From positions 372,001 through 436,000 of the forward strand of contig NW_027272213.1 in assembly GCF_040938485.1 (NCBI RefSeq): a stretch of 64,000 nt of DNA. The letters are read 5' to 3'. The notes beneath the pieces were generated by a model, which saw nothing but the letters and a program-made list of their open reading frames with translations, was not told the DNA's origin and made no database searches. This stretch comes from Diadema antillarum. Taxonomy: Eukaryota. Each line of letters starts with the position of its first letter. Within the stretch, counting starts at the first letter, position 1. Of this stretch, positions 4,029 to 48,668 are shown in pieces. The translations under genes were made by a program, and so were the position numbers.

Positions 4029-7000
4029 TCAAGGTACTTTTAATGTTTGAACTGGAAGACTATCTCTCCATCCTCGCTGTAACTGTTGACTCAGTAGCCG
4101 CACCAATTCCTTGTTCTCGGTCTTATCGGCCACATTGTCATTTTGATCGGGGTCCGAATCGTTCATGTACAGCTCTCTGGCTTTAACGTCGCTCCAATCC
4201 CCCTCGAACGTGTTGGGATCAAACTTGACCCACTCGGTGAAGTGGTAATCGGCTGTCCTCATGGAGTAACCCATAATGGTGATATTTTTCAGTTTCGGTA
4301 GATCAGTTTGTTCGCATGGCGTCACTCCGGGCCGCGGGTACTGACTGTAAGTGGCGTTCTTCCATCGAGTGTACATCGGCGGCAGGCTCACCCTGTGGTT
4401 CGTGACGAGAGACCCTTGGCTTAGCAATGGCACAAAGCTGTAACCTTCCGTGCACAGTGAAGTGTTGAATGGTTTCGGTGGGCAAAGAGGTGGAACTGTC
4501 AGACCCGCCAATTCAGAGAGAGTGGGAAAAATGTCTACCATTTCTACAAACTGCTCTACTATCATCCCGTCTTTGACGCTTTTCTCTCTATCTTTATTTG
4601 ATTTTGTCACTGATTCCGCCAGCAAGGGGTTTATCTGCGGGAATTTCTTCAGCCTTGACGATGTATTTCCTGTGGTAACGCCAGGCACGTGTACGATAAA
4701 GGGGACCCGAGCAGACAATTCGTAGTTGGAATATTTGCACCATTCGGCGTGTTCACCAAGCTGCCAACCTATCAAGGAAACAGAACAATGAAGGAATAAA
4801 CGTTTAAACAGGCAACAATGAAATCACACAACACCAATGTTGTAAGGCCTTAATTCTCTGTCTCTGTAAAGTAATTATATTGAGTGATATTATTCGGGAA
4901 AAACATCTTTAAAAAGGTAACTAGGTATTCATTCTCTAGGATTACAATGGCATGAAATTTCATAACTACGTTCCATTCAACGACCTCAGAACGGCAAACT
5001 TAAAGGTAGGGGATACCTTTTACAGACCTCCCAAAATGCAGCAAAACATTAAATATGAACCTCAGGGGACTTGCTTAGGCCACTGCTTAGAAATTTGGAA
5101 GTCAACAGTTATCTAGAATTTGAATAATGCACAAAACTCAACTTCTCAGTAGTTCTGTGTGTCAGCCACACTTAAGCCTTTTTGTTGCATTCGTCTGTAT
5201 TTGCGATCTATAAACACAAATCTAAAAGTACAAGAGCTGATGTAATAACATATAGAGTGCGTGGCAAGAATGTATATAGAAATGTTAGTAAGTGTTTATG
5301 AACTTTCTTCACAAAATATACATGATGGACACACATGCAGTACATGGGTCTGCAAAGGTAGCCTAGTAATGTACTGGAATTTACGGTGAGCCCCGAAAAC
5401 AATTCAATTCAAAATCTAACGGTCAAAAAAATGTACTAAATGTTACCTTCCACTTTCAATACTTTATGGGAGTTTCTAATATGATACTCTCTTCAACATA
5501 CCACTGTATTTATACAACTCTTCATTTAAGGCGTGCAAATGGGATTCCCTACCTTTAAAGCTTCGCCTTTGCTGTCATAATGTGAGAGAACATTATTGTG
5601 TGATAGATTTCAACCTGCAAAAGAAAATTGAAGCTTCGTGCAATAACAAGTGCAACTCATGAACTGAGATATTACAATAATTATGTAAATATATTTTCTT
5701 TCACTCTTCAAAATGAAACCTGATTTGATGTTTAAACCAAGTTGTCAAACGTAGCCCTATAAGGGGGAGCTCGAGTGATTTTAAGTAGGAAATTATAGTG
5801 AAAAGCCCATGGACAAAAACCGCTGGTGCCAAAGGGAACTCTAACCAGGACCTCAATGATCGACAGACCATGAACTTAGCCACTTGGACACAGCAACTCC
5901 TGCATTGAGACGAGACGTACGTCTTCAAGAGGACTCACCATGGTCTCCCACAAATACAATGATGGTGTCATTCGCAAAGCCAGATTGTTCGAGAGCCTCA
6001 AGCAGTCCTCCAATTAGGAAGTCCGTGTAAGACGTAGCCGCGTAATAACTCTGTCGCATTGGAGCCTGTATTGGTGAAAATGGTTTCAATATACGTGGGA
6101 AGCAATTTACTCGAGTCAATTAAGAAACACTGACTATTGGACGCTATAAAGTTAGATACTATCTATCATAAACTGAAAGGGTAGCTCGCTAACTGAGTTA
6201 ACGACGACAACAGAGATGACGTTGATAATATGTTGATGATCTTTTGGAAAATTATCCACAAGGTTTGTGGCAGGTACATGATTGTGACTTCTTTTGCTTT
6301 CCCATCTTTTTTTAATGGCTTCACTCACACTGCAACTGTGATGCTCCTGCGCGTATTGAATACACCTTTTGAAAATATACATGTATATTTTTTTGCACAT
6401 TTTTTGTCCCTTTTGAATCTCTTGTACTACAAAGTGCTTGGTCAAAAATTATTCTGTGCTATATACCATAGTAGGAAATTATCATTATCATGACAGTGGG
6501 AACGTTTAGTCATTATTTTGCTGTTTTAAAGTTACTACATCATGCAAGACAAACATCAGATCAAACCCATGCTTACATGAAGATCGATTGGAATAGTGCC
6601 GTAGGGGAAGCTAAGATTCAGTGCGGCTATATCGTCTCGAAGTCGAATCGTGTAATAGTCCTCGTATGCTACCTCTGGTTGAGACAGTGACCGGTTGGGA
6701 TTTGTTGCTATGGCAATGGAGTCGATTGGATACAGCGACTTGAACTCCTCCGGGTACTTCCAAGGGATGTGTGGCTTGTGGATACCCACTGCCAAGAAAA
6801 ATGGCGGCTTCATGATACTTTGGTGGAGTTTTGAGTCGTCTGAAGGTCGTTTGGCGAGGGAGAGGTTCTCAAGGATCCTGACCGCTTCCTCGACGGACTG
6901 GATGTCGGGAAGAGTCTTCTCTGGCATCTTCGAGACGTCGACTGGACACATCACGTTATTGTGAAGCGTGCCATCTTCATTTGGACACACCTAGAAGGAC

Positions 7001-7446
7001 AACATCAATTTCAGAACATGATCGAGCAAATAAACTATGGAGGCCTTGTCTGTTCAATTTAAAGCAAGACCCGCCATCTTCTCGTTCTCTTGGGACTTCA
7101 AGTATTGTTTCCATATATAACGGGTATGACACCACATAGTTTTGCAGTCTTCTGATCCCGCGATGACAGCATCAGAACTTTAAGAATTCATAACGTTTTA
7201 ACGAATTGTCAGATTTTTCTCAAACTTTCACCGATGTAATGTCCTACGATACTATATGATGTTGCATTCTCTCAATTCATATCACATTGTATTACATTAT
7301 GTGGGTCTCATTCTCCTTTAAGTGACTCTTATAAGATCGAATTAATTTCTATTTTAATAACGATCCTGGAGCATTATACTATTACATTATTTCATGACAT
7401 GTATACTTTATACTATGTTTTGATTTTCGTTGATTGGAAATAAACT

Positions 7447-7492
<46 letters not shown>

Positions 7493-10386
7493 ATACTACG
7501 CTAATCTAGATATTTCCTCAGAGCAGTGTATGATAATATTCCAAAACTATTTCACTCATTTCCGAGTCTCATTCTGCAGCTTATCTTATTCTTTTTTAAT
7601 CAATTAATTAATCTTTTTTTTTTTGGAAAAGAATAATGTATTCTGAAGTTTGCACTTACTTTTGCACCTGAGTATTTCCTAGTGGATGGGTGAAAGGCGG
7701 GAACGGACCAGCTGTATGGGAAATCATCGCTTTTGTTACTAGGTCGTCCTGGAAAAAATGGAATAAAAAGGTATAAAAGCAAATGCGAAACCAAGCGTTA
7801 GTTGCAAAAAGCCACGTACACTCGTGTGGGGCAGAACATTTCCAGTGGAAAACCAGGAACTTACAGGTCAACTCTGTCGCATACCTAAAATACTGGAGGC
7901 GATTGAGCCAATATTAATCTAAGAATGTGAGATAAGTCAGTGCGGTGCAATATACATGTATCATCTATAGTATAGCTACCAACGCTTTGCTCCCTCTGTA
8001 TAGGCCTACGTTAACTCGGTCCATTACGAGACTCTGAAATTCCCATGTGCAGTATGTGTATTGGAACAAACAGGTTTCCCTGGAGGCCATGTCACAAGTT
8101 CACGCTGCCTTTCTGAGTTTTGTTGTCCCAGTCTCATAACATGGAAGAGATATACGTATTACAGGGAAAGCTATCACATAATCCCAGAACGATCATGGAC
8201 AATCTCTATTCTGCAAATGTTGCGATCGACTTCATTAATTGCTTCTATGAGAGTGGGACAAAGATTGAGATGAAGAGTGGGCGAAGGTACCTGTGGATGT
8301 GCTGATATTTCTAGCAATGACACCTGTATAGTAAACTGAGTAAATCTATATCTAAAGGGCAACATTTGGAATCGTAAAATCCGCGATATGATTATTTCAT
8401 TGCAATAATAACCCCCAACTTCATGTGCAGCTCTCAATCATTCTAACCCCTTCTCTCAAGACATAGACCTATACAACTCCATCCCCACATCATCTCACAT
8501 GTGAGCTTTGACGAGAAGTAATGTACATATCATTATATATATTTTTTTCTTGCCTTAAGCGAAATCTGATGGTGAAGAGTCGATACACTTTTTAGATACA
8601 ATATTAGGGTTAGATTTCGTCATGCCAAAAGTACCCTTTTACTGGAGGTTAAGGGAACACGCAGGCATGCAGTTCCTCCGACCCAGGCGCCTGGAGCATA
8701 ATTATAAACACATAAAGGGACGCCAGGACATTGCTTCACCTTCGCCTAACCAAATTACTCTCGTCTCTGAATAACATGAAAAAAAAAAGGAAGACTGAAG
8801 AGATCACGGCTTCCTGGGGATAAATGGTGTCAGATTGTAGGCCTATAATATTGTTGATTTCGCTTGACGGAACCATACTGCTTTGGATAGTCCTTCAAAG
8901 CTTCAAAGCTTCCTCTGCTTTATAGGTCCATAGAAACCACTTGCGTCGCTAGAATTAAATGTATTCCTGCGTAACTAGTATAATCGTTAGCAAGAAAAAG
9001 AAAAGAAAAGAAAGAAAAGCAGGTGAATAAATAAATATAGATGCACCTGGATGAAAGACCTTGCCAACGGAAGCCGTGAAATATCCGTTGTCTTTGAAAT
9101 GCTGCGGGAGTGTGGTGTAATTCCCTGCATGTGTGCGCCAGTAGGACCCAAAGTCATACAGCCTGGTGGTGTCTGGACGTCGACTCGTCAGGAAAGAGAC
9201 CCGGCTCGGGGCGCACACCGCTTGCTTGCAGGGAAAAATAATCAAGCAAAGAAATATAAAATGAAGAGTGACACTGACATACACATGAGGGACACAGTAC
9301 TCTGTAATTTGATCATTGTTTAGTAGCTCCATGATTTGGTGCAACACAAGCACTATGGTGTATTTTTGCGATCAAAGCCGAGAAATTGTAAATTGATTAC
9401 TAAAACCCATGATTTTGATCTACTTGTTTAGCTTTGCTAGTATACGTTTCGTTTGAGAACTTGAAGGCCCTGCTTGTCAAAATAACCGAAAAAAGATAAA
9501 TCTTTAAAAAATCACCCGATCACTAAAAAGTATGAATGATTAATTTCTTACTAAGCATTTATTGTAGAAAACTGGTCAGTTACAATTCATATTGAAAAAC
9601 AAAAAAGCACAAAATCTAAAAACAAAGAAATACACAACACAATCCAAAACGATATAATTCTTAAAAAGGCGACAATAAGATCTAGGGATTAATTTGCATT
9701 ATCAATTGATTAATCAAAATTAGAAATTGATAATTTCTACAATTTCTAAGACACTATCTTGCAGACTACAATGCGGGCGTCGTGTTTGCCAATATTTTGT
9801 CGCAGATCGCGCCCCTGATTGCTGCGATAGGGGAGGGGGGGGGGAATCAGCCCCCTCCCCCATATGGCATACATCCAAAAAAGCCCAATCTGATTAGGAT
9901 AGGGTTAAATTAATATTGTCATTAGTACATGTACCGCCCAGCTGACAAATTCTAAGAGATCCGAAATCCATCAGTTTCTGAAGACTCAATTTCGCTGAAG
10001 CCTTGCACAACTTCATTATCATAATAATATACTCAATTCATCAAGACATGTGAATCAGATTTTGGCGTAAAACTAGTTGACTTTCTTTCTTCGTACGCAC
10101 ATTGGAAATGACATTGTTCAAAAGCTGACACACCCTCGATCAATGGAAGTGGAAAACAAACAGAGAAACAAACAAATATACAAACAAGCACGCGAATGAT
10201 GAGTAGCAAGCAAAGACGCAACAATCAAGCTATATACCTGAGCCATTGCGTTGGTGAAAAGTGCCGACTGCCCAGCGAGCCGGTCGATGTTTGGCGAGAT
10301 GATTGGACCTCCATAGCAACCAAGAGATGGGCGGAGATCATCGACCACGATGAAGAGAACGTTGAGTTTTTCACCTTCCGATGAAC
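4029..10386 (-). CDS. IDS: Iduronate 2-sulfatase-like, copy A (5' end runs into the N-gap)
   Basis: Exons (minus): <=10386-10238, 9224-9047 (178), 7748-7660 (89), 6990-6577 (414), 6065-5939 (127), 4768-4029 (740, stop). Phases are consistent and donors are GT. Motifs [57 protein letters not shown] match the IDS family. Confidence 0.93.
5004..5554. mobile_element. Kolobok-type non-autonomous element in the last intron of IDS-A
   Basis: TTAA at 5000-5003 and 5555-5558; termini AGGTAGGG / CCCTACCT; absent at the homologous site in unit B (about 16850). Confidence 0.8.
7448..7492. repeat. (GATT)n microsatellite
   Basis: Seen directly. Confidence 0.95.
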
Positions 10387-10563
10387 NNNNNNNNNNNNNN
10401 NNNNNNNNNNNNNNNNNNNNNNNNNNNNNNNNNNNNNNNNNNNNNNNNNNNNNNNNNNNNNNNNNNNNNNNNNNNNNNNNNNNNNNNNNNNNNNNNNNNN
10501 NNNNNNNNNNNNNNNNNNNNNNNNNNNNNNNNNNNNNNNNNNNNNNNNNNNNNNNNNNNNNNN
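10387..10563. other. N-gap (177 N) at an (AAC/AAT)n repeat, covering the 5' part of IDS-A exon 2
   Basis: Seen directly; homologous gap at 24772-24945. Confidence 0.98.
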
Positions 10564-10888
10564 AACAACAATAAGAAAAATAATAAGAATGACAACAACA
10601 ATAACAAATAATAACGTTTTGTGATGCTAATGATAATGTATCAAGCTTTTATCGAAAAGGGATACGCCATATTCGTTGACGCGATATTGTCATCCCTCCT
10701 ATATATAGTAGTCGATGTCGCGGCGTCATGTTGTATTTACATAGCTCCATGCCCGGGACGCCTCTGTTATACATGGTGTGGTTACATGTAGATCCATGGT
10801 TATTCCCCACCTCCCTGCATGATTAAGCGGGCATTGTGCGCTCAGTGCATATACAGACAGAGAAAGTACACTAGACAGATACAATTAC

Positions 10889-10969
10889 GGCTGAGGTTTC
10901 GCTTGCCAGAGTGAATAGCACGCAGCCTGCAAATGTCAGCTGGCCTACAATAATACGTGTTGATGTCAT
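10889..10969 (-). CDS. IDS: Putative exon 1 of IDS-A (signal-peptide-like MTSTRIIVGQLTFAGCVLFTLASETSA)
   Basis: ATG at 10969, hydrophobic 27-aa peptide, GTAATT donor. The join to exon 2 cannot be verified because of the gap. Confidence 0.4.
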
Positions 10970-13011
10970 TATGTACAAAGTTTATCACCCTCCTAAAATG
11001 GGACGAGCATGTACGTCTCCACTAATCGCGTTTGATCAAGTCTATATACTCCATTATAACGGAATCACACCACAATAATCTGATAAGATCGAACGGTGAT
11101 CATAACGTTTTTTTCTGAGCGGAGGAAGCTATCTAAATTGGTTATCGAGAGCCTGATTTTGGGTCGATAAAATACAATTTGACCATTCGTATACGGTAAG
11201 GAGACATTGGTGAGAGAGGGTCTTTATACTCTTGTGAGTATGCGGGTTAGGCCTATAATACCCTATACATTCAGCGATATATTTCATATACCCACCAGTA
11301 TCATATGGTAATATTTTCAAGACAGAGAATTTTATGTCCATGTAGACACCATTAAGAATATGTTGCTAGATCATCTGAAGGCCTATATTCAACACTCTTG
11401 GCTTTGGAGATGATTCCATGAAAGACACCATGACAAAGACATCGGTACATCGTACTCCTGATTACACCTATGAGACATTGTTTAGCTATACGTACCGTTC
11501 AATTCCGTGATGAGAAGCTGAGAGAAAATAAACATTAGCGAAACGAAGAGTCCCTGCTTTCGCATGTTTGCACACTGTACAGATCGTGGATTTCATGCGA
11601 AGAAGACAGATGAGTGCATGGCACAGCCTATAATAATGGCGCAGACGAGCCGTCTCAGATTTACAGCGCCTTTATCCTAGGGTTTGTGAAGATTAACTCT
11701 GCGAATTACCAATCCAGGTATTTGTCTCACCTTATGCACCCAAGCGTCTGAAGTAAATTGGATCAAGACATACGTGGATATGGACCAACATTATAATTTC
11801 CTCCATTCGCTGTACAGCGTCAACGGACCGTATGTGTATAATACGAATCCGCAAACATATTCTTGAGGCCTTGTCACTGGCATCATGAGGTCAAATCTTA
11901 AAGTTAAGTGAAAATGCTAGAATTTCATCTTTATAATTTTTACATATTTAAATCTCGGAATGGCTCAAGGTATCTTCTTGGTCTAATGTTTTAGCGTCAG
12001 TTGGCGTTGTATTGAGATCATAATTATTCTGTAGTAATTGTGCGCAACTATACAGCAATGGAAATTCTGCTATTTTTTTCGATAAGATAACTTCGTTATT
12101 TATTTTTCTGTGCAATTTATGTTTGATATTTAAGCTGTATATTTTCACAGATATGTTTTTATGATATTCCTTTGAATACAACTCAATATTCTGTATCGTT
12201 TGAAAGTCATTTGCATAATTACTATGTTATGATTTGTACATGGCAACCATCATACGGATCAGGTGTAAGCCAGAATCCTTTCATCAGTAGATAGCCACAT
12301 GCTGTGATTTTATGACTATAAGCTTCAATTTGACGAATACAATGTAGATGTTTTCATCATCTTTAACCAACGCTTCACACGTTTGTACACACTAATGAAT
12401 GTTTTCTTTTTGGTCAACTTGGTATGCATAAATGTTTCTAAACGCCACAACCAGGACATTTTATTATTCACTGTTATGTTAACATAGCACTATCATGCAG
12501 AACTATCTTACTAATGTTTATTACAGTACTATTATGTATACAATGTACTATATCTCCATGCCATAATTATGTTCAAGTATATTGTGGTCTCATTTTTTCT
12601 TAAGTGCAATGATTCCACTTTCATGTGATTTACATATAGTACTATAATGCAAGTCATTACGATGTTACAACATTGGTGATTGGTTTTTTTTTAACATAAT
12701 TTATTATGATACATGTATGATTATGAGAGGGCAAGGTGCGCGAGTACGCGCGTATGTAAGCTTGTGAGAAGTCGAGTGTGAATACATTGCGGATTCTTTT
12801 TTTATAAGCCGTAGTGTGTGCATGTGGTGTGTGTGTATGTGCGTTCGAAAATGCGAGTTGGTGAGCTCTTTATAGTTCGAACAAAAATTATTCATAAGTG
12901 TTCGATGTATGAACTTTTAATTGTTATGAAAACTCTGCACTCATGCAATATGTGCACTCATGTACAATTCAACTTCTGCTTGCCGTGCATGCATTGAGTA
13001 GAGACCATTAT

Positions 13012-13183
13012 NNNNNNNNNNNNNNNNNNNNNNNNNNNNNNNNNNNNNNNNNNNNNNNNNNNNNNNNNNNNNNNNNNNNNNNNNNNNNNNNNNNNNNNNN
13101 NNNNNNNNNNNNNNNNNNNNNNNNNNNNNNNNNNNNNNNNNNNNNNNNNNNNNNNNNNNNNNNNNNNNNNNNNNNNNNNNNNN
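13012..13183. other. N-gap (172 N)
   Basis: Seen directly; homologous gap at 27924-28104. Confidence 0.98.
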
Positions 13184-13552
13184 AGTTGAACACAGGTTTT
13201 GGAAAATCGCCACGTTCTTATAACGCGATGCGAAACCAATAAGTCGGTGTACACACACACACAGTTCTGGAGGAAAAATATGTCAAGAATAAAACTGTCC
13301 GAGCCCTGCCACCTTTCAATGTATTCCGATTTACCAGAGTTGGACTTATAATATAAAAATGGGATTCCGTTCTCAAGCCAGCAAGGTTATATAGAACGTT
13401 GTTATTCATTCAGCTGGGTCCTAATAATATACTTGTACTGCAGTTCGCCTAGAGACTAAGGTGGCAACTACACCGGGGTACAAGGATGCCCATCGAGCAT
13501 ACAATCTTAATTTTAATTAGTGCATGTCTTCGAATGAATTGCATTTGTGTAA

Positions 13553-13602
13553 AACAAACAAACAAACAAACAAACAAACAAACAAACAAACAAACAAACA
13601 AA
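13553..13602. repeat. (AAAC)n microsatellite (paralogous copy at about 28503-28562)
   Basis: Seen directly. Confidence 0.95.
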
Positions 13603-13857
13603 CATGAATTAGAACATAATTTCAGGACCTGAATACGTAGTAGTAGCAGTAAGACAGATAGTAAGTATGAGACGTAAATTTACAATAGCAGAGGAAGAAT
13701 GAATCACTCTCATCACATGAACAGCGTGGCGCCTCGCACAATATAGGGACCAATATAGCGACCATACACCACGCCACATGTGAGGTGCTTTACGAAACCG
13801 TCTAGGTGCGATGTGTGCACCCCTCATCTCAGGGGTGAGCTCCTGACGGGGTCAATG

Positions 13858-14043
13858 TAGTTTGCAGGCACAAACCCTTGTTGGTCGTAAATAAATCTGT
13901 GCCAAAGCATCTCTTTCATATTTCCTCCACTGTAATTGTGCTCTTGTTAGGAGAGACATGCATTCGGGGCCTAAATGACGCAGTGCCAGTAGTCTTGGCG
14001 CAGACTCCTTTACGACCAAACAAGGGTTTGTGCCTACAAACTA
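13858..14043. mobile_element. Mutator-like (MULE) MITE
   Basis: About 34-bp TIRs (TAGTTTGcAGGCACAAACCCTTG...) and a 9-bp target duplication GGGTCAATG at 13849-13857 and 14044-14052. The unit-B copy (about 28828-28952) is internally deleted. Confidence 0.8.
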
Positions 14044-18743: not shown

Positions 18744-18788
<45 letters not shown>

Positions 18789-29141: not shown

Positions 29142-29175
<34 letters not shown>

Positions 29176-37500: not shown

Positions 37501-39382
37501 AAGTGTTGAGGGAGAGTGGTGTAGTTTCCTGCGAAGGTTCTCCAGTAGAAGCCAAAGTCATAGAGTTTGGTTGTGTCTGGTCTGCGTCCTGTCAAAAATG
37601 AGATTCGGCTTGGGCCACAGACAGCTTGCTGAAATTTAAAAAAAAAAACCACCCAAATGAAAAATAATCAGTTTGACAACCGATATCTCATCACTGTGCA
37701 TATCAGTTGCAATATGTATTTCCTGTGTACTGTAGGCCTATAATCCTACCTCCCCTCCCTCACCACCATAAAAAGAAAAATGACAATAAAAGAAAAAAAT
37801 GCAGATCAACAGACTGTATTCAAAAACTATGATCCACAAAAATCATGATAGACTTATTGTACATTGTATATACCCACCAATGCAAGTGGATTGAAAGTCA
37901 GCTTTTCTTTTTTTGTGTACCGAGAACTTTAATTTAGAGAAGCTTCCAAAGATCTTTATTTGATTGAGTGTGTGTTTGGGCATGCACTTCTTGACCTTCT
38001 GATTTAGTTCATCAAGCCATTTTTTTTTTAACCTGCCTATGATGGAGATGCTGTAATGCAGACAATATTTTTGATAGAAATGAATAAATATCTTCACCCC
38101 AGTTATACATGCAACACATTACCTGCACAAAGGCATTGTTGAAGACTGCAGATTGGGAAGCCAGTTGGTCAAGGTTTGGGGATATAATTGGACCACCATA
38201 GCAATTCAGCGATGCTCGTAGATCATCAGCAACTATGAACAGCACATTTGGTTTTGAGTTTGACGCTTCTCCTGGAAAAGCAATGAGAAACGTGTTTTAA
38301 CCATTTTTGCAAGATTGGTTAACAAACTTTAACTTCCTTAATAAAAAAAACACCCTTGGTATATTGAAGCATGGTTGCAGCAGCTTACACAATGTCATGT
38401 CAAAGAAAACACTCTGTCTCTGTCATATGAAATATGGTGGAGTACAACGTATCTGAGCAGAGCAACTAATTCGACATTCTAGAGCACTGCAACTTTATTT
38501 AAAGACCAAGGGGGAAAAAAAGCAAATCTCACTTTCAATATCTCATCTGATGCTTTAATATACAACAAATTTCATCAATTTTACTAGGGTCTACACCAAT
38601 TGTAGAAGTTCAGGACACCACCACAGCTCAGCCACACTGACATGACCACAATAGGGTAAAATTTACTGGTACATGTAGTTGATAGATGTGCAGGGGGGCG
38701 GATCCAGGAATTCGTGGTAAAGGGGGAAGGGGCGCAAAAAAAAAAAATTCTGGTGCCACTTCCAGGTTTAATCAGCTGACAAGCAAAAAAAAAAAAAAAG
38801 AAAAAAGAAAAAAGAAAAAGCCTCACATACTTTTTTTTGTGTCTTTTTTGTCAAGCGTCATTCTTTTAACTTTGTGCCAATAATCCAAGGAAATACTCTT
38901 CTTCCTGGTGGTGAGCAACCACAAAACAACTAGGCCTAGATCTCAGCCCCATCTAGTTTGTGTCACTCATGGTTTACTATTATTAGAACTAGATTTTCAA
39001 TATATGTCACTTTCAAATTTAAATTGTTGAATTGGATGTCTACGGGCCGGACGAATCAGTCAACATGGACTAAAAGGAGGTCGGCATATGTATATAAATT
39101 CATAAATAACCATCAATCATAGCTAGTACTAGGTAGTAGAGACTAGAGTAGTAAACATGGTAAATAGTAGGCAGCACGGTCATTTCCTGTTCCCTGTAGT
39201 TTGTGTCTTCCATAATATTTGGCTTTGCCTTTATACTGCCTTGGCTTTTAAGTTTTATCTCATTTTGCCGAGGGTAAATGAATAAATAAATCGTTACCTC
39301 TCCTGGTAAGTAACAGTATGAAAGGAATGACGAAGTACTGGTATCTTGAAAGGATCATCCTGTCCCTGGTTGCAGAAGACAT
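31546..39382 (-). CDS. IDS: Iduronate 2-sulfatase-like, copy C (complete, 8 coding exons, 595 aa)
   Basis: Exons (minus): 39382-39298 (85), 38271-38123 (149), 37628-37451 (178), 36179-36091 (89), 35688-35549 (140), 35179-34915 (265), 34404-34278 (127), 32300-31546 (755); total 1788 nt, all GT-AG and phase-consistent. N-terminal hydrophobic signal, [49 protein letters not shown]. Confidence 0.95.
32448..33374. mobile_element. pogo/Tigger-like non-autonomous element in the last intron of IDS-C
   Basis: TA-CAGTGGAAACTCG ... CGAGTTTCCCCTG-TA; repeated CTCGTTATA(A/G)C subterminal motifs. Confidence 0.8.
33927..34106. mobile_element. pogo-like MITE, CAGTGCACTCC family
   Basis: TA-CAGTACACTCC...GGAGTGTACTG-TA; related copies at 52793-53018 and 54290-54808. 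Confidence 0.8.
36474..36631. mobile_element. Degenerate copy of the 29365/29774 MITE family (another partial copy starts at 38691)
   Basis: CAGTGACGGATCA...TTCCTGGAAACGCCCTTG with the same internal layout. Confidence 0.6.
36899..37065. mobile_element. PIF/Harbinger-type MITE
   Basis: TIR GGGGGCATTTCATGAAGGAACTTGTCG / CGACAAGTTCCTTCATGAAACGCCCCC; 3-bp CAG target duplication on both sides. Confidence 0.85.
37134..37222. mobile_element. piggyBac-like MITE (inverted, truncated relative at about 56568-56642)
   Basis: TTAA-CCCATTGAGGACG ... CGTCCTCAACGGTTCAA. Confidence 0.7.
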
Positions 39383-39460
39383 TGTCCAGAGGAAGTGAAG
39401 CAAGAAGCTCAGCACTCAGCAAACGCACGTCGTTGCACCTTGGTTCGTGTTGCCAACGAT

Positions 39461-39518
39461 GTGTCACGTGACACTAGATGCATCATGTGACACGAATCTG
39501 AGTACACTGTCACGTGAT
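39461..39518. promoter_or_regulatory. Cluster of CLEAR/E-box motifs upstream of IDS-C, between IDS-C and IDS-D
   Basis: GTCACGTGAC at 39463-39472 (inside the 14-bp palindrome GTGTCACGTGACAC), TCATGTGAC at 39483-39491, GTCACGTGAT at 39509-39518; 80-136 bp from the IDS-C ATG. GTCACGTGAC is the known TFEB/MITF CLEAR consensus of lysosomal genes. Confidence 0.7.
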
Positions 39519-41250
39519 CGTACTCCCAGGTTCGGGCTGCAGCTACAGAGACAGAGGCGACGGTCCGGTCCGTGTTTGATAACTCCTTGGTGTTTAAAAG
39601 GTTGAAAGAAGGCACAGCTCGTGAGCCAGCCACCAACAGGGATCCGATCTGAAGGATGATATCACTAGTGGTGTCACTTCAGTCAGTAACTATCCGTTTA
39701 CGTTTGGCGTTTCTACACAGCCCAACCGTTAAGTTCTACTTCTAGAATCTAGTAAGTTTTAATTCCCACTCCCAGGCATGATTCCTCATGTAATTTTTTA
39801 TGTTATCTCGTTATTTTCTAGCTCCCTTGACCAATTGTTGACCGCCGTGTGCATTACTAAATTAGGTATGCAGCACTTAACTTAAAGTAATTTTAACCAT
39901 TCCAAAATTTATCATGATTTATATTCAGTATTAAATTATTTGTGTAATGTTACATTGTCATTGTGCCATTGAATTGTCACATTGATGATGCAGAAATCCA
40001 GTGGGGGCAGTGGCAGTGAATTGACCTTACAAATTACAATGAATGCAAAACATTTCATTTTGATGATCAGTGCAAACAAGAAGTTGTATAAGCTATTATT
40101 TACGTGAGGGTTTAATTTTTGCGAATTTTGCAAATCACAGTGGGATCGCGAATTTAACAACATGGGAACATGCCTCCATGCACTTTGTTGATAGAGCATT
40201 AACGTAAGCATCGATGTCAGTTCGCGAAAACAACATCTCGCGAAATGTCTGCGACCTTGTCATTCGCAAAAATTAAACGGTGTATTAAGTTAGCAGTAGC
40301 TGACAAATGGAAGGTTACACTGTTTGTAGGGCAGTTTAGAGTATGGTAACTAAAATTAGTTGGGAGGGCTGAGGGGGGATAAGGAAGTCTCAGATTTCCA
40401 GGAAGAGTGCCAGTATTGTCCAGACCAAACAAAAAAAGCGAGGGAAGGGAGGGGAAGTGTTAGTGCATTGATAATGATTAAAGGAGTGAGAATTTAATTA
40501 GATCTAATTATCAATACCATTGCTTATAAATTTGATGATATAATTCTAACAGAAGTTCAAAATAATGAAGTCCCCAAAGATATCATATATCAGAAAGAGT
40601 TGGTTTCCTTATGTCCCTCCACTTGTCTATACCACTAACCTATCCTTGTTAAATACAACTGTAGCTCACTCACAGATGCATGCACTCATACTAGTCATAG
40701 TCCCACGCCATTGGAAAGTGGTAGGGTGGGGGAGGGGAGACATAAGGAAGACTAATGTTTCAATGTGACACAGCAGAATTAATGGCAGTCAATGCATCAT
40801 GTGACATGATCATGACCTATCCAGTAAATTATTATGTAATTGAAATAAGAGCATACAGAAAAGGTGACTAAAGAGGATGAAATCATATGGAAAAATTTTC
40901 CAAACAGCATGCCATTTAACCACATGAAATGGAGGGTGTAGAGAGCTTAATGCATTGGTTACTGCGAGTGAATGCAAGATTCCCTATGACAGATGTTGGT
41001 TGGAACATGATTTTACATGGCCTGACCTTTGCATTGCTAACAAATGGTGCTTCTGGTGTTTTTGCAGCTCTGATTCACGAGTTTTACAGCCAAGGTGGGA
41101 TCACTAGACTTTAATACCCAGAGCCTATCAAGTGAACTGGAAATGGGACCCATGGTCATGAGTTGATGCTGATTGCTGTCAAAAGAAATTGAGTCCAGGA
41201 AACACCTTGATACTACTAGGCTGGTGGAACACAGATGTAGCCGCCCCAGT

Positions 41251-44200
41251 ATGCAGCTGTCACATTTTCTTGTCATTTTCGTGCTGCTTCTCATCACTAT
41301 CAGTAGGGGTAAGAAATTTATACACATAAATTTATGTCTCAGATCTCAAGAATGAAATGACATATTGTCAGTGAGATTAGACTGCAAGGATAGAAACTTA
41401 GTTCAACCTCTCAATTCCTCCTGCTTTAGTTTGCCTTGTGGGTTTGCCAGGGTGAAAATATGAGTTGAAACCCCAATGATGCTGTGCTCAGGACAGACAA
41501 GAACAATGTGTCACTGGCTCAAAAGTGGTGCAGAGCATGGTGCCACAGTAGCGTGGTGGGTCAGTTAATCACTACTTCTGTACAAAGTGGTGACTGGGCA
41601 GGTGTCTCGTGCTGTGCTATGATTAAGAACTGCAATCCAGGGGATGATTCTGCAACTGCAAGCATGGAATCATTTGATAACAAAGTTTTCTTGACTTTAT
41701 CAAGACTGTTGATTCAGGTATGCTTTGAAAGAGGGTTGGCAGATTTGCGGGGGTGATTTGCAGAGCCCTGGAAAAAAAAAATTGAGAAACTTTGAATGTG
41801 CTGATGTTTTACCCAAACAGGACAAAGTAGAGAAAAGTTTCTGTAGAGCAAGGATTCAAAAGTTCTTCCTCTCTCTCATTAATAGGGTCTGATTTATTCA
41901 CTATCTTACAGGAGATGCATCAAAACCAAATGTGCTGTTCATAGTTGCTGATGATCTACGAGCATCGCTGAATTGCTATGGTGGTCCGATTATATCCCCA
42001 AACCTTGACCAACTGGCTTCCCAATCTGCAGTCTTCAACAATGCCTTTGTGCAGGTAAAGTAATTATGATATTCTATCAAAATGTGATCCTGTAGAAGAG
42101 TAACAAATGATTGAATGCAATGATATTGAAACATGAGATACAAAGGAGATGTAGCTGGCATGCATCATAAAAAGGAGATGCAGCTGCATCATGCAACACC
42201 AGGATTATACTAAGAAAGCTGCATTCATATCTGCATCCATGATTCAGTTACTGTGGCAAGCAATGAGGATACAGAAAAGAGCTTTCTTGATTACCCACAA
42301 GCTGTGACATCAGTTGTATTGGACTTCTTGTTTATTAATTTGTATGGTACATGAGATGTTACCATTTTTCAGTTTCTTTTTTATTGTATCAAAATTTGCT
42401 TCAAGCCATTTCAGCAACTGAATAGCGTCTAAAAATAATAGTAAATGGAATCAATCCTTCACAAGTCTTCAGATAAATTCTTCCTTTTATGTACAGGTGT
42501 GTTTTGTTTTGTTTTGTTTTGTTTTGTTTTGTTTTGTTTTGTTTTGTTAGGGATGTCTTTGTATGTATTATGGGAAAGAGAAAATACTGCTTAATATGAC
42601 AGTTTATTTGCATGACAAAGATGCTGTTATCAGAATCATGCAGGGAATCCTGCAGGGAATAGTATAATACAGACATTCACATATTTATACATGTTTCACC
42701 CTATCTTATACTCCCTCCACTCTCCCATCTTCTTTTTGTTTTTCAGCAAGCTGTCTGTGGCCCAAGCCGAATCTCATTCTTGACAGGACGCAGACCAGAC
42801 ACAACCAAACTCTATGACTTTGGCTTCTACTGGAGAACCTTCGCAGGAAACTACACCACTCTGCCTCAACACTTCAAGGAAAATGGTTACTTTACTGCAT
42901 CAGTTGGCAAGGTTTTTCATCCAGGTATGATTACTGACACACAAGAAAATATAAGTCTTTTTGAAAAATAAAATGAAATCTCAGTGTCCACATACTCCAT
43001 ACTCTTCACTTTTATATACAAATCAAAAGCAGATCGTCACTGATACATAAATCAAATCTCCATGATACATGTAGTGAAATCAGTTTTGCTTAACAGTTTG
43101 AATTTCAACCTTGAAAACCAAATAAAAGTTTGGTGATAAGATTTTGGAAAAAGCTTCTACTTCAACACTATTTATTCTTTTGATTAATTAACATGTGCCA
43201 AACAAAAGCTTACCTAACCTGTGATAATGGTACATAATTCGACACATGATTTTCCATTAGTTTTTTATAATTGACATCAATATAACCCAGATGACAAGGA
43301 TGATTGCACATTTGAATTGGATGAATGTGTCAGTTTGCAAGAGTACTTGCCAGACATTGACATATCATACTTTGTTCATTCATTCATTCATTCATCCATC
43401 CATCCATCCATCCACTCATTCAATTGTTTCAATGTAGATGAAATACATCATTCTGTATGACATGTATGTGATTAGAATACCAAAAGTGAATTCCAATGGT
43501 AGCCTTTTGTTTGCTGTTATTGTTTCAGGTGTAGCTTCTAATGAAACAGATGACTACCCATACAGCTGGTCTATTCCTCCCTACCATGCTTCTACAGAGA
43601 AGTACATTTATGCCAAGGTAATGAGCAAATTCAGAATGACAGAGTGATAAACATATAAATAGGCCTGCAGTAACGTTTTTGTGTAGTGTCACCTTTTTTA
43701 AAGACGCAAAGTTACACATTGCTACCATAGCAGCCAAAGTTTAATGATAACGGTCCAATTTGTCCCTGCTATGACATGTGCAATGTAATTGAAGTATTTA
43801 ATACATTTTGTGGGAGACTTTTTTCTAACATATTACCATGATTTTGGACAGTAATTCAGCTGGAGACCATTTTAATCCACCACCTTGGCTTATTTTCGTA
43901 TGTGCAATAATAATGCATCATGCAGTGGTAGTAACTGACACAGCTGCTGAGTTGCACATACATGCACTGCATAGCATTTTACTGCTTGGTACTGTAATCA
44001 GGAAGAGAAAGAAAAATAAATCAATTCACAGGATATATTTGATGTAGTAGCATTCTTGTGTTGTTGCGTTAAGATTACTAACACAACAAAATCTTCTTGT
44101 GTAAAGCACTAAAAATCACTTTCACCTATTGTTGGGTAATACTGCAGACAATGATGAACAAAATAAAAATCAATTAACAAAATGGCACATTTTTCATTGG

Positions 44201-47200
44201 TATGCAGGGGTACCAAATATATACCACATCATATAATTCAACAAAATAGAATAATGCTCATCATGTTCCATATTAATGCATTGTCAGCAAGTTCTTAAGT
44301 CATGTCTTAATCCTTGTCAAGAATACCTTTTTATCATATCTATATTGCCTGTATCATTGTAGTCATTTAAAGGACAAGTTCACCTTCATAGACGTGTGGG
44401 TTGAGTGAATGCAGTAATATTAGTAGAACACATCAGTGAGAGTTTGAGGAAAATCGGACAATCCGTTCAAAAGTTATGAATTTTTGAAGTTTCTGCTCAG
44501 TCACAGCTGGATGAAAAGACTACTATAGCTTGTGATGTCACGTGAGTACAAAGATATAAAGAAAGAATAAAGAAAATTCAACATATTTCCATTTTTCTCG
44601 CATAACAAAAGAACACTCGACTTCTCTCTTTCAGAAGGCAGGGGGAATAATATTACCCTTAACATACGTCAGTAGCAAGTCGAAGAAATGTGTACTTTAT
44701 TCAAAAAGTAAAGTTTTGTGAAATTCTCCTTTTATTTTCCTTATATAGTTGTACGCATGTGACATCATACACTGTAGTAGTCTTCTCTTCCAGCAGTGAC
44801 TGCACAGATACTTTAAAAATTTATAACTTTTGAACGGATTGTCCAATTTTCCTCAAACTTTCACTGAAGTATTCTACTAATATTGCTGCATTCTCTCAAT
44901 CCTTATGTATATGAAGGTGGACTTGTCCTTTAATCTAAGGCATTCTTTTCATTTTATCATACAGAGTACAAGCAAAGCATTGTTGAGTTGTGTCCCTGCA
45001 CCCTTTTACAACACTGTACCTCCAAATATGAATACAGTTTATCACAACACACAGAGGCTCACACACCTTATATAATCTTGTGTCATGGCTGATCATCATT
45101 GCCCATTGATTTGTCTAATAACAGGTGTGTCCCTCAGAAGATGGAAAACTTCACAACAATGTGGTGTGTCCAGTCAACGTGTCCAAGATGCCCGAGCACT
45201 CTCTCCCAGATCTTCAGACCACTGAGAGAGCCTTGGAGATCCTGGCTAACTTGTCTGCTGCCAGGTGAGGTTCAACCTTCTCTTTGTCTCTCTCTTTTTT
45301 TCTTTTTTCTTTTTTTTTTTTAACAGCCAAAAACTTTTATAATTCACTCAGCAATACCCCGGACAGTTTGCATAACCAGAAAAACTGTGAGCTGTTAAGA
45401 TAAATCAAACATCAAATCATATTGTAAACTTTTTTTTTCTTTTTTTCTTTTTACAAGAGTGCAACAAGAGATAGATATACAAATTTGAAGAGCTTTGTGC
45501 ATCGTTGGAAAAGACTGAAAAATAATTCGTCATATATCTGCTCTTTAGTAAATTAAGATGCACTGTACTGTGAGCCACATGTGTAAATGATGGTAGTTAC
45601 AGCGGTGTTCAAATATATTTGTTTATCTTGTGGACTTTTGCAGAAAAGATTCCTCACCAGAATCACCCACCTGGGATTCGCCTTTCTTCCTGGCAGTTGG
45701 CTTCAGGAAGCCACACCTGAACTGGAAGTACCCCGAAGAGTTCCGTGACCTGTACCCCCTGGAATCTGTGGAGATCGCCCCAAACAGGCAGATTCCGGCC
45801 AAACTGCCCAGCGTGGCTTGGGCAGACTTCTTCACAACCAGACTAAGAGATGATATCAAAGCCATGAACCTCAGCTTTCCTTACGGTCTCATTCCAGATG
45901 ACTACCACGTGAGTGGGCCGTCTCTAATACTGGCCTCTGATCACTTTTTTTGGGCCTATGGCAATTACCCCCTGGGCAATTACCTGGGACTCTTCTCCTG
46001 ACCCTGACCTTAATCCTAAATCCTGATCCTAAACCTAACCCTAACCCTAATCTTTACTCTAACCTTATTACTAACCAGTATTTAGCGTGGGGTAATTGCC
46101 CTGATACGGAAAATGCTGTGTAAAAACAGCAAGCTGTTGTGTCAATGCAGTCAACCTATCTGTACCAGCTGCTTGTGGGAAGCTGCAAAAGTGGCTATTG
46201 GAGACAGGTGGCCACTATTCCATTGGTTGCTATAACAGTTTGATTATGCAATCAAATAGTGACTGTGGGATACAAATCTTGTGTCTGCTGGCTGTGTTAA
46301 ACAGGTTGCCGCCATATGCAGGGACTTAATCACTGTATTTCTTGTGGGAGAATTTTAGGTGACTGCATGAAGCAGGTGGCCACTAAAGACAGGTTTGACT
46401 GTATATACCAGTTAAGATGAAAACCTCAATCTTTCTCCCTACCGGTTCCATGACATTTGCTCCTGCGATGTAATTGCTCTCATGAAATATCTACACGCTA
46501 AGCCAACCATAAATTCTACCTACAAATGTAACCCTAACCCTAATTCCAATTCTCACACCAAACTAACCCTAAATCCTTGTCGAAAATAAGACCAGAGCTA
46601 TCGTCACAGGAGTAAATGTTGTGTCACTCTCCCTACCACATGATTCTTGTATTGTCCTCATACCTGTAGTCTAAGCCAGAACAGCCGGAAGACATTATTC
46701 AGAGGAGACCGCAAGATGAAAAGGAATGAAAAGAAAATAAGGAATATCAATAATTGCCAATCACAAGCCTTGTGGTGTATTGTAACAGTTTAAAGTCACA
46801 AACTTCTAAAACATGTGATCTTCAGTTTGTGGCAAGAATAGGTATTGATCGCTGAATTTAATGCAATTTTGACAAAGTGTATGCTTCAAAACATTCTGTT
46901 ATTGTGGCATCATACATATTGTATCATGTTCTGTGATTCAAAAGTCTCACTCCACTCACAGAAATAAAATGATTTTGTATTTATGGCTGTATGTGCATGA
47001 TTGTAATTCCATTGGATAATCTGTGTCAATGTCAATATAAAAATACAAAATCTTCAGTGCTACATGTGGAAACGAGCCTCACTTTTGCACTGCCATAAAT
47101 ATTTGCTACACACCAGGCTTTGATGAGACAGAGTTATTATTCTGCATCAACCTTCGTTGACTACGAGTTGGGCCGAGTCCTCCAAGGTTTGGAAGAGGCT

Positions 47201-48668
47201 GGATTTGCCAACAACACCATCATCTCATTTATAGGGGACCATGGTAAGGTTTAGTGACTGAAAATTTCCTTGTTAGAGAAAAAGATAGGAAAGCCACAGA
47301 AAGCTATTTAATACCCTACAATTTTTTTTTATCCTTGAATAGTTATGCCTGTAGTTTGTAAACTTCTAGTGTGTAGCAGTAGACTGCTACCTCTCTGGGT
47401 TATCCTTTTTCAATTTTATTTGATTTGATCAGAATCATATGCACAGAGCTAGCTCAGGAAGAAATTCCAAGCAGATGAATGAAAAGAAAATATGGATGCT
47501 GATTGTTCTCATGACATTCTAGAACATAATCGATAGCTTTATTAGAGAAGCTTAATGCAGATCTTTCTACCTGTTGGCAAAAGTGGTATGTACTTCGTCA
47601 AGTTTGTCATATTGATGTTATAACTTCAGGTAAAACTGAAATGTCAAGAGTTTAATCAAGAACTGGGAATCACATTATCTGTACATTTGCTGATTGTAAA
47701 ATTTAGTAAATGAAGGATTAAAAAAAAAAATTTTACTCCAAGGAAACAAAAAGTCAAAGAAAACAAAATTTAAAATCCAGGGTAAACAGAAATGCTCATT
47801 TGATAAATGGTAGATGAGGTGGAATTAAAAATTGCATGTTGCATTGTGATAGAGAGTGATTCTTAGGTTTGCAGTGCATTTTTAAGTCCTTGGAATTTTG
47901 TGATGTAATTGTTTTGCAGGGTACCAACTAGGAGAGCACGGAGAATGGAGTAAGTGTTCCAACTTTGAAGTGGCAACGAGAGTGCCTCTAATAGTGCACG
48001 TTCCTGGGATGACCGACACAAAGTTTCCACAGTTAAAGGCTAAATTTCCTCTCAGAGATCCTTTCCAACAGGCTTCCAAGAACATAAAGGAGAAATCAAA
48101 GCCAACATCTAAACTTCCAGTTGGTGCAAAGAGACGCTTAAAGGGTGATATTGGAGTGGCAGTTGAAGAGCTGGTAGAACTGGTGGACTTGTTTCCAAGT
48201 CTGTCTGAGCTGGCTGGGCTGAAGGTACCACCTGTTTGCCCTCCACAGCCATTCAAGGTGGACTTCTGTGCAGAGGGGAACAGTTTTGCACCCCTGGTAA
48301 AGGCACACAGCAGACAAGAGATCAAGCAAGAGTTTTCCAGATGGAAGAATGCTACCTTCAGCCAGTATCCCCGGCCAGGGACGACCCCGAGCGTCTACAC
48401 AGACCTGCCTAACCTAGAGATCATCACTGTCATGGGTTATTCCATGCTGACTGAAGACTACCACTACACAGAATGGGTCGGATTCAACGGCACCACGATC
48501 AAAGCTGATTGGTCGGATGTGAAAGCGAGGGAGCTTTACATCAGAGGCGTGGACCCACTGGAGGACAACAATGTGGCAGATGAAAGCGAGTATAAGGACT
48601 TGGTGCTGAAGTTGAGTCAAGAGTTACAAAATGGATGGCGCTACTCCCAGCCTGTCATGGCCAACTGA
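41251..48668 (+). CDS. IDS: Iduronate 2-sulfatase-like, copy D (complete, 8 coding exons, 582 aa)
   Basis: Exons: 41251-41308 (58; [20 protein letters not shown] signal), 41912-42054 (143), 42747-42924 (178), 43529-43617 (89), 45125-45264 (140), 45644-45908 (265), 47117-47243 (127), 47920-48668 (749); total 1749 nt, all GT-AG and phase-consistent. Confidence 0.95.
44371..44929. mobile_element. Intact Kolobok-type non-autonomous element in IDS-D intron 4
   Basis: TTAA-AGGACAAGTTCACCTTCAT ... ATGAAGGTGGACTTGTCCT-TTAA, with long subterminal inverted similarity. Confidence 0.88.

What the first reader, a model, noticed from the sequence alone, without database searches (positions are those of the whole stretch)
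4029..48668. Four-gene iduronate-2-sulfatase cluster forming two diverged subfamilies
IDS is single-copy and functional in human. Here four intact-looking paralogs sit within 45 kb: A/B ([28 protein letters not shown]) and C/D ([27 protein letters not shown]). All keep DD, the FGly cysteine, R, K, H, DH and K ligands. The 178/89/127-bp exons match the human IDS exon sizes as I recall them, which supports vertical descent. Inference: the expansion could serve degradation of unusual sulfated glycans (dietary algal polysaccharides or invertebrate sulfated GAGs), with A/B being a neofunctionalised branch.
Basis: partly seen in the sequence, partly recalled or inferred. Interest (0 to 1): 0.72.

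Follow-up and report, generated by a model that had tools for sequence, protein, structure and literature searches.

The report
Sea-urchin iduronate-sulfatase gene cluster
The window holds four real, intact-looking copies of a sea-urchin gene for a sugar-desulfating lysosomal-type enzyme, part of an old six-gene cluster that public databases already annotate, so it is a sound but fairly ordinary gene-family expansion.

Summary
Window 4029-48668 carries four iduronate-2-sulfatase (IDS)-like genes. A and B are a direct tandem pair, and C and D are a head-to-head pair. All four have open frames, GT-AG introns, 178/89/127-nt exons and all ten catalytic residues.

The genome is the uncollapsed 1.75 Gb Diadema antillarum assembly. 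A second haplotig (C707) carries the same series, with A and B as separate loci on both, so the copies are not allelic artefacts. Both pairs are under purifying selection (dN/dS 0.29 and 0.25).

The N runs do not cut any visible exon. Two lie in intron 1 of A and B, 12 nt upstream of the exon 2 acceptor, so that acceptor is the one uncertain splice site.

The cluster is larger than reported. Two more genes (E, F) lie just upstream, and a seventh, the most human-like (G), lies elsewhere. The A/B, E, F and G lineages each have Strongylocentrotus or Lytechinus orthologues, so the family is old.

C/D is the more derived pair (R226, an extra intron, and Y337/C348 in D).

RefSeq already names these genes "iduronate 2-sulfatase-like". 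The scan had already noted the C/D divergence island on other DNA of this genome. Substrates remain untested.

The parts
4029..11565 (-). Gene A, IDS-like, 7 exons, 584 aa. Exons: 11565-11496 (signal peptide, 70 nt), 10374-10238 (137), 9224-9047 (178), 7748-7660 (89), 6990-6577 (414, equal to human exons 5+6 fused), 6065-5939 (127), 4768-4029 (human exons 8+9 fused, with stop).
   Evidence: GT-AG at all junctions and no internal stop; the RefSeq allele model P0234 (584 aa, on the other haplotig) has the same structure. The RefSeq model on this contig (P0236, 518 aa) is truncated at the 5' end. Intron 1 holds the N run 10387-10563.
15856..26511 (-). Gene B, tandem twin of A, 7 exons, 603 aa. 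Exons: 26511-26442, 24758-24622 (137), 23612-23435 (178), 19670-19582 (89), 18377-17907 (471), 17370-17244 (127), 16595-15856.
   Evidence: One search gives the model. In one search, RefSeq XP_071477898.1 (P0128, 603 aa) matches 100% at exons 1, 2 and the last, and 94-99% in the listed HSPs of exons 4-6 (which run past exon ends); exon 3 matched at 96.8% only for P0236/P0234. Intron 1 holds the N run 24772-24945.
31546..39382 (-). Gene C, 8 exons, 587 aa (595 aa from the upstream ATG at 39382). Exons: 39358/39382-39298, 38271-38123 (149), 37628-37451 (178), 36179-36091 (89), 35688-35549 (140), 35179-34915 (265), 34404-34278 (127), 32300-31546.
   Evidence: One search gives the model. RefSeq XP_071477900.1 (P0125, 595 aa) matches 100% at exons 1, 5, 7 and the last, and 96-98% in HSPs that run past exon ends (exons 3 and 6); exons 2 and 4 gave no HSP at 90% or more.
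41251..48668 (+). Gene D, head-to-head with C, 8 exons, 582 aa. Exons: 41251-41308 (signal peptide), 41912-42054 (143), 42747-42924 (178), 43529-43617 (89), 45125-45264 (140), 45644-45908 (265), 47117-47243 (127), 47920-48668.
   Evidence: One search gives the model; the allele model P0241 and D. setosum P0239 (both 582 aa) share this signal-peptide exon. The RefSeq model on this contig (P0237, 599 aa) uses another 5' exon at 39459-39569 that has no signal peptide.
3809..15638 (.). Tandem duplication unit 1 (gene A plus its upstream region).
   Evidence: it aligns collinearly with 15636-30646 at 69-95% nucleotide identity (mostly 74-95%), introns and intergenic DNA included. The end of unit 1 abuts the start of unit 2.
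15636..30646 (.). Tandem duplication unit 2 (gene B plus its upstream region).
   Evidence: introns of A and B align over 46-100% of their length at 78-94% identity.
10387..10563 (.). N run inside intron 1 of A, 12 nt upstream of the proposed exon 2 acceptor.
   Evidence: An N run sits at the homologous place in B (24772-24945). Not filled.
24772..24945 (.). N run inside intron 1 of B.
   Evidence: The RefSeq model P0128 splices across this stretch.
13012..13183 (.). N run about 1.45 kb upstream of exon 1 of A (intergenic).
   Evidence: An N run sits at the homologous place upstream of B (27924-28104).
27924..28104 (.). N run about 1.4 kb upstream of exon 1 of B (intergenic).
30266..30443 (.). 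N run between the upstream region of B and the 3' end of C (intergenic).
47922..48206 (+). Divergence island at the start of D's last exon. It covers the [13 protein letters not shown] active-site flank and a basic loop.
   Evidence: dS is 0.47 and dN 0.175 here, against dS 0.12 and dN 0.009 for the rest of the exon (Fisher p = 6e-4); the C/D differences here are the same in D. setosum.
32014..32298 (-). The matching island in C ([13 protein letters not shown]).
39383..41250 (.). Shared 1.9 kb region between the divergent start codons of C and D, a candidate bidirectional promoter.
   Evidence: Promoter function is inferred only.

Best explanation
The window holds four of the six genes of a clustered family of iduronate-2-sulfatase (IDS, SulfAtlas S1_7) paralogues in the sea urchin Diadema antillarum. 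Each gene encodes a signal peptide, the CxPSR motif whose cysteine is converted to formylglycine, the calcium and sulfate ligands, and both IDS disulfides. Each is therefore most likely a secreted or lysosomal hydrolase that removes a sulfate ester from a sugar, probably a 2-O-sulfate at the non-reducing end (inferred from homology). The family arose by old tandem duplications before diadematoid and camarodont urchins split. Two younger events followed in the Diadema line: a direct tandem duplication gave A and B, and an inverted duplication gave C and D. C and D are older than they look. Their exons appear to be kept alike by gene conversion, apart from an island around the active-site flank. 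All four genes are kept by purifying selection. Shown here: gene structure, intactness, copy reality, phylogeny and selection. Inferred: enzymatic activity, substrates and expression.
For: IDS identity: the last exon matches human IDS (5FQL, 6IOZ) at E 9e-47. Exons hit Pfam Sulfatase and SGSH_C. RefSeq proteins on a contig of the same length (491,764 bp) match B and C: 100% at four exons of C and three of B, 94-99% in the other listed HSPs, and equal in length (B 603 aa; C 595 aa from the upstream ATG). All ten catalytic residues and four disulfide cysteines are kept. Real loci: haplotig C707 carries A', B', C' and D' separately, and each is 93-99.6% identical to its own copy against 84-92% to the paralogue. 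The assembly retains both haplotypes (PMC13511894). Selection: A-B has dN/dS 0.29 (p = 2.5e-6) and C-D 0.25 (p = 6e-11), with no rate asymmetry within either pair. Age: the echinoid clade has SH-aLRT 99. The G, E, A/B and F lineages each pair with S. purpuratus or Lytechinus proteins. D. setosum has both a C and a D orthologue. Conversion: C/D introns cannot be aligned while exon dS is 0.03-0.24, and an island has dS of about 0.5-1.1.
Against: No expression or activity data were available, so a silent copy cannot be excluded. The exon 2 acceptor of A and B (GGAAG|GT) has a weak pyrimidine tract and lies 12 nt from an N run, and the RefSeq model of A on this contig is truncated at the 5' end. 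The trees are quick-search trees with SH-aLRT support only; the careful search did not finish. Some inner nodes have support of only 81-91. Evidence for conversion after speciation rests on two 'species-pattern' sites and on dS heterogeneity.
Confidence: 0.85

Rival explanations
1. Some of the four copies are assembly artefacts: allelic haplotigs stitched in tandem in an uncollapsed, highly heterozygous assembly.
For: The assembly is about 2.5 times the haploid estimate, and 84% of BUSCO genes are duplicated. N runs sit at homologous places in both tandem units.
Against: The other haplotype of the whole cluster is a separate contig (C707) that itself carries A', B', C' and D' in the same order. 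Each window copy is 93-99.6% identical to its own C707 partner, against 84-92% to the paralogue. A and B differ by a 57-nt exon insertion and by intron sizes. C and D have introns that cannot be aligned, and both have orthologues in D. setosum.
Confidence: 0.03
2. One gene of each young pair is an unexpressed or decaying copy (a young pseudogene) that merely still has an open frame.
For: There are no expression data. D carries changes next to the active site (W337Y, Y348C). The RefSeq models of A and D on this contig have odd 5' ends.
Against: There are no stops, frameshifts or broken splice sites in about 580 codons per gene. Pairwise dN/dS of 0.25-0.29 is far below 1. The polarised amino-acid changes are balanced, 6 versus 9 and 9 versus 12. 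D's Y337 and C348 are identical in D. setosum, so they are maintained.
Confidence: 0.1
3. The paralogues have split one ancestral job (tissue, stage or compartment) without any change of substrate. This is subfunctionalisation by regulation, with identical chemistry on iduronate-2-sulfate of heparan and dermatan sulfate.
For: The catalytic residues are invariant. The variable cleft positions (167, 226, 348, 479) also vary among single-copy IDS genes of other animals, vertebrates included, so they need not signal a new substrate.
Against: R226 is fixed within the E and F lineages across urchin species. D's pocket changes are conserved in two species inside an island that resists homogenisation. 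This pattern fits selection on the pocket itself.
Confidence: 0.35

Closest known systems
Human iduronate-2-sulfatase (IDS; PDB 5FQL and 6IOZ; SulfAtlas family S1_7)
   Same: It is the best solved-structure match (E 9e-47 for the last exon). All ten active-site residues are kept, as are both disulfides (C171-C184, C422-C432), the CxPSR formylglycine motif and a signal peptide. Intron positions and phases after Q80, G140, K169, Q293 and G336 are shared, which gives the 178-, 89- and 127-nt exons.
   Different: Human IDS is single copy, whereas this genome has seven genes. Human exons 5+6 are fused in A, B, E, F and G (C/D instead carry an extra phase-2 intron there), and exons 8+9 are fused in all seven. 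The docking-inferred substrate contacts N167, H226, Y348 and K479 are not all kept. Activity has not been tested.
RefSeq 'iduronate 2-sulfatase-like' genes of sea urchins (D. antillarum XP_071477898.1, XP_071477912.1, XP_071477900.1 and XP_071477901.1; several each in S. purpuratus, L. variegatus, L. pictus and D. setosum)
   Same: These are the same genes (A-D) or their orthologues. B and C agree with the RefSeq proteins in length and at 94-100% identity wherever the comparison listed an HSP.
   Different: RefSeq gives automatic names only. I found no paper in the held library that describes the expansion. The RefSeq models of A and D on this contig have doubtful 5' ends.
Bacterial S1_7 sulfatases of marine polysaccharide-utilisation loci (2-O-sulfatases acting on carrageenan or ulvan fragments). 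This comparison rests on my own knowledge and was not checked here.
   Same: They belong to the same SulfAtlas subfamily as IDS, and they show that the S1_7 scaffold can be retargeted to other 2-O-sulfated sugars.
   Different: They are prokaryotic and distantly related. The window genes sit inside the animal IDS clade with animal introns, so nothing suggests horizontal origin.

Membership tests
Formylglycine-dependent sulfatase (Pfam PF00884, SulfAtlas S1) | C-x-P-S-R motif with the cysteine that becomes formylglycine | tested here: met
   CAPSR is present in A and B, and CGPSR in C and D.
Formylglycine-dependent sulfatase (Pfam PF00884, SulfAtlas S1) | Match to the Sulfatase profile | tested here: met
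   The scan was exon by exon on gene D. Exon 2 scored 27.4 bits and exon 7 scored 34.0 bits, both above the 25-bit cut-off. Exon 3 scored 24.0 bits, just below it. The C-terminal exon hits PF16347 SGSH_C above its cut-off. RefSeq proteins B and C carry PF00884.
Iduronate-2-sulfatase (IDS, S1_7) | Ten active-site residues of human IDS (D45, D46, C84, R88, K135, H138, H229, D334, H335, K347) | tested here: met
   All ten are present in A, B, C and D and in the RefSeq proteins of B and C. Paralogue F, outside the window, has Q at position 138.
Iduronate-2-sulfatase (IDS, S1_7) | Closest solved structure and phylogenetic placement are IDS rather than another sulfatase | tested here: met
   5FQL and 6IOZ match at E 9e-47, and the next hit is an arylsulfatase at 5e-06. 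The genes fall in a well-supported echinoid clade that groups with other echinoderm IDS sequences among animal IDS.
Iduronate-2-sulfatase (IDS, S1_7) | IDS disulfides C171-C184 and C422-C432 | tested here: met
   All four cysteines are present in all seven paralogues. The residue roles are taken from PMC5472762.
Iduronate-2-sulfatase (IDS, S1_7) | N-terminal signal peptide for ER entry (needed for formylglycine formation) | tested here: inconclusive
   Hydrophobic first exons with phase-1 donors were found for all four genes and agree with RefSeq models. No signal-peptide predictor was available. In A and B the join to exon 2 crosses an N run.
Iduronate-2-sulfatase (IDS, S1_7) | Substrate contacts proposed for 2-sulfo-iduronate (N167, R273, Y348, K479, and H226 at the +1 site) | tested here: not met
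   R273 is kept. N167 is G in A and B and Y in C and D. K479 is L in all four. H226 is R in C and D. Y348 is C in D. These positions also vary in sharks, gar and other single-copy IDS genes, so they are weak as family markers.
Iduronate-2-sulfatase (IDS, S1_7) | Hydrolysis of the 2-O-sulfate of L-iduronate in heparan or dermatan sulfate | not testable with these tools
   This needs recombinant enzyme assays.

The most novel reading that the evidence does not exclude
The clustered urchin IDS paralogues have diverged in substrate. Some, such as D with its conserved Y337/C348 pocket or the R226 lineages C/D, E and F, would no longer act on iduronate-2-sulfate. They would act instead on other 2-O-sulfated alpha-L sugars that urchins make or eat. 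Candidates are the 2-sulfated alpha-L-fucans and galactans of egg jelly that gate species-specific fertilisation (structures in PMC6163371) and sulfated algal polysaccharides in the diet of this grazer.
Probability: 0.2. Interest if true: 0.6.

Novelty: new member of a known kind. Interest (0 to 1): 0.3.

Why it matters
The result gives a clean, checked picture of an animal IDS family that has stayed multi-copy since before the main urchin orders split. One pair (C/D) appears to be homogenised by gene conversion except around the catalytic pocket. That makes the family a tractable case for asking how a lysosomal glycosaminoglycan sulfatase is retargeted. It also offers candidate enzymes for turnover of echinoderm sulfated fucans and galactans, or for digestion of algal polysaccharides. 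There is a practical warning too. In this uncollapsed Diadema assembly every gene count is roughly doubled by the second haplotype, and the automatic models of A and D on this contig have doubtful 5' ends. The genes themselves are already annotated, and tandem expansions of this enzyme look common in marine invertebrates, so the surprise is modest.

Tried and rejected
- **Allelic artefact.** Rejected, because each copy has its own allele on C707.
- **Pseudogenes.** I found no stop, frameshift or broken splice site, and dN/dS is well below 1.
- **First candidate for exon 1 of C (38643).** Rejected, because no donor there gives a usable frame. It was replaced by 39358/39382-39298, which RefSeq confirms.
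- **CAPSR/CGPSR and HKPH/RKPH as subfamily markers.** Rejected, because both states occur in other lineages and in vertebrates.
- **Human docking contacts as proof of a new substrate.** Rejected as weak, because they vary even among vertebrate IDS.
- **Careful IQ-TREE search of 58 rows.** It did not finish in two 300-s runs, so I report quick trees only.
- **Big representative protein search.** Not used, because the word search with a database protein (P0001) already returned full-length named relatives.
- **Structure prediction and fold search.** Not run, because the tools return no coordinates, so pockets could not be compared.
- **Spliced models.** Searches used single exons by reference or database proteins. 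The only joining was a local frame check inside scripts.
- **N runs.** Not filled. C707 was used only for last-exon loci that contain no gap-homologous DNA.
- **Literature.** Four searches on the expansion itself and the two Diadema assembly papers turned up no description of an urchin IDS expansion.
- **Human exon sizes.** I could confirm from papers only the exon ends c.507 and c.1006. The other boundaries rest on my own memory plus the gap-free alignment.
Full report
**What is there**

A self-comparison shows two kinds of duplication.
- Window 3809-15638 is repeated directly at 15636-30646, mostly at 74-95% nucleotide identity (one short block 69%), introns and intergenic DNA included. This is the A/B pair.
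- C and D are an inverted, head-to-head pair in which only exons and up to 36 nt of their flanks align (90-96% identity).

Exon by exon, gene D hits Pfam Sulfatase and SGSH_C. Its last exon matches human iduronate-2-sulfatase (5FQL, 6IOZ) at E 9e-47, and the next hit is an arylsulfatase at 5e-06.

**Gene models**

I delimited exons from cross-paralogue alignments and splice signals.
- C (587 aa, or 595 aa from an upstream ATG) and D (582 aa) each have eight exons.
- A (584 aa) and B (603 aa) each have seven exons.
- Every junction is AG/GT, there is no internal stop, and each gene ends in a stop codon.
- All four have exons of 178, 89 and 127 nt, at places homologous to human exons 3, 4 and 7.
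- Two of the human boundaries (c.507 and c.1006) are documented in PMC7903682. The others I know only from memory.
- Human exons 8+9 are fused in all copies. Exons 5+6 are fused in A and B. C and D have an extra phase-2 intron in the variable loop before the HKPH/RKPH motif.

Joining was done only inside scripts to check the reading frame.

**The N runs**

- Runs 10387-10563 (A) and 24772-24945 (B) lie in intron 1, 12 nt upstream of the proposed exon 2 acceptor (GGAAG|GT).
- The exon 2 frame is open up to the gap edge, so the acceptor could also lie inside the gap.
- With the proposed acceptor, exon 2 is 137 nt and joins in phase to a signal-peptide exon about 1.1 kb (A) or 1.7 kb (B) upstream.
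- The RefSeq protein for B uses exactly this join.
- The other three runs are intergenic.
- Two pairs of runs sit at homologous positions in the two tandem units. This suggests a property of the sequence, or deliberate masking, rather than random breaks.
- I did not fill them or look up their letters.

**Which genome, and are the copies real?**

Proteins named "iduronate 2-sulfatase-like [Diadema antillarum]" lie on a contig of 491,764 bp, the length of the window's contig. They match B and C: 100% at four exons of C and three of B, 94-99% in the other listed HSPs, and the same lengths.

The 1.75 Gb assembly with about 2,960 scaffolds retains both haplotypes (PMC13511894 and its preprint). A whole-genome search finds the same series of last exons on contig C707.

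Each C707 locus is 93-99.6% identical to its own window copy, non-coding DNA included. Identity to the paralogous copy is only 84-92%. A, B, C and D are therefore distinct loci on both haplotypes, not alleles placed in tandem.

**The family is larger and older than reported**

- Two further complete genes, E and F, lie just upstream of the window (C1325:344208-360261).
- A seventh gene, G, lies on C1348, with an allele-like second match about 200 kb beyond D' on C707.
- All seven have open frames over about 560-600 aligned codons.
- Between lineages, protein identity is 60-67% and synonymous sites are saturated.
- A last-exon tree and a full-length tree of database proteins both give an echinoid clade with SH-aLRT 99.
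- In the full-length tree G, with S. purpuratus and L. variegatus orthologues, is sister to a cluster clade. In that clade the E, A/B and F lineages each pair with S. purpuratus or Lytechinus proteins.
- These duplications therefore predate the diadematoid-camarodont split.
- The C/D lineage was found only in Diadema. D. setosum has a C orthologue and a D orthologue, recognisable by their different signal peptides.
- These are quick-search trees. The careful search did not finish.

**Selection**

| Pair | dN | dS | dN/dS | One-sided p against neutrality |
|---|---|---|---|---|
| A-B | 0.028 | 0.096 | 0.29 | 2.5e-6 |
| C-D | 0.042 | 0.168 | 0.25 | 6e-11 |

Amino-acid changes polarised with the other paralogues are balanced: 6 versus 9 for A and B, and 9 versus 12 for C and D. 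Neither twin looks like a decaying copy.

**C and D are older than they look**

- Their introns cannot be aligned, whereas A/B introns align over 46-100% of their length.
- Exon dS ranges from 0.03 (exons 2-3) to about 0.5-1.1 in the first 60 or so codons of the last exon.
- In that island the C/D differences are the same in D. antillarum and D. setosum. They include W337 versus Y337 and Y348 versus C348 beside the catalytic K347.
- Outside the island the four proteins are nearly identical. The only informative sites there are two that group by species.
- This fits exon-limited gene conversion with a protected island.
I tested it here on the window copies and it held.

**Function**

All ten catalytic residues and both IDS disulfides are kept in A-D (roles from PMC5472762). 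The most likely mechanism is that of IDS:
1. The protein enters the ER through its signal peptide.
2. FGE converts the motif cysteine to formylglycine.
3. The enzyme carries out calcium-assisted hydrolysis of a sugar sulfate ester.

These steps are inferred from homology.

Cleft positions proposed by docking in the human enzyme vary. Position 167 is G in A and B and Y in C and D. Position 226 is H in A and B and R in C and D. Position 348 is C in D. Position 479 is L in all four. The same positions also vary among vertebrate and other single-copy IDS genes, so they are weak evidence for a new substrate.

A/B keeps H226, W337 and Y348, as do G and most outgroups, whereas C/D (with E and F) carries R226 and D has a remodelled pocket.

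**Novelty**

The genes are in RefSeq under automatic names, and several sea urchins show three to four such genes. Other marine invertebrates such as Littorina, sea stars and acorn worms also have several. I found no paper describing the urchin expansion. The finding is real, but it is an ordinary tandem expansion of a known enzyme family. It has one interesting twist, the conserved C/D divergence island, which this scan had already noted.

Noticed in passing
G000:C1325:344208-360261 (loci L012, L013), upstream of the window: Two more complete IDS-like genes, E and F, lie on the minus strand, so the cluster has six genes. In this haplotype F reads G-K-V-F-Q-G-G where the others read G-K-V-F-H-P-G. 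The catalytic H138 is therefore Q (and P139 is G). F-lineage proteins of S. purpuratus and L. variegatus keep H.
   Followed up: partly
G000:C1348:96371-111651 (loci L016, L017): A seventh gene, G, is the most human-like copy (YHKPH, EWAKYSNF, N167 kept). It is sister to the whole cluster clade and is probably the housekeeping lysosomal IDS.
   Followed up: partly
G000:C707:416155-416673: The other haplotig has an extra partial last-exon copy between A' and B'. RefSeq fuses material there into an 816-aa model (P0235). This looks like structural variation between haplotypes.
   Followed up: no
window 55700-60045, minus strand: A mitochondrial carrier (SLC25) gene lies here. ORF 59401-60045 hits Pfam Mito_carr at E 7e-47, and 57563-57838 hits it at 7e-09.
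   Followed up: partly
window 58423-59442: A near-perfect palindrome has arms of about 490 nt (95-99% complementary) and a 37-nt spacer. It abuts the SLC25 exon. It may be a foldback or MITE-like element.
   Followed up: no
window 22357-23183: A tandem array with a 151-nt unit (about 4 copies, 92% matches) lies in intron 3 of B. It accounts for part of the reason that this intron is 3.8 kb against 1.3 kb in A.
   Followed up: no
window 39459-39569, plus strand: The RefSeq model of D on this contig (P0237) starts at this alternative 5' exon, which lacks a signal peptide. The exon lies within about 80 nt of C's start codon, which is on the opposite strand. It may be an alternative transcript or a model error.
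   Followed up: no
window 35548-35180 and 45265-45643: C and D share a phase-2 intron inside the region homologous to human exon 5. The intron is absent from A, B, E, F and G, so it is most simply an intron gain in the C/D lineage.
   Followed up: partly
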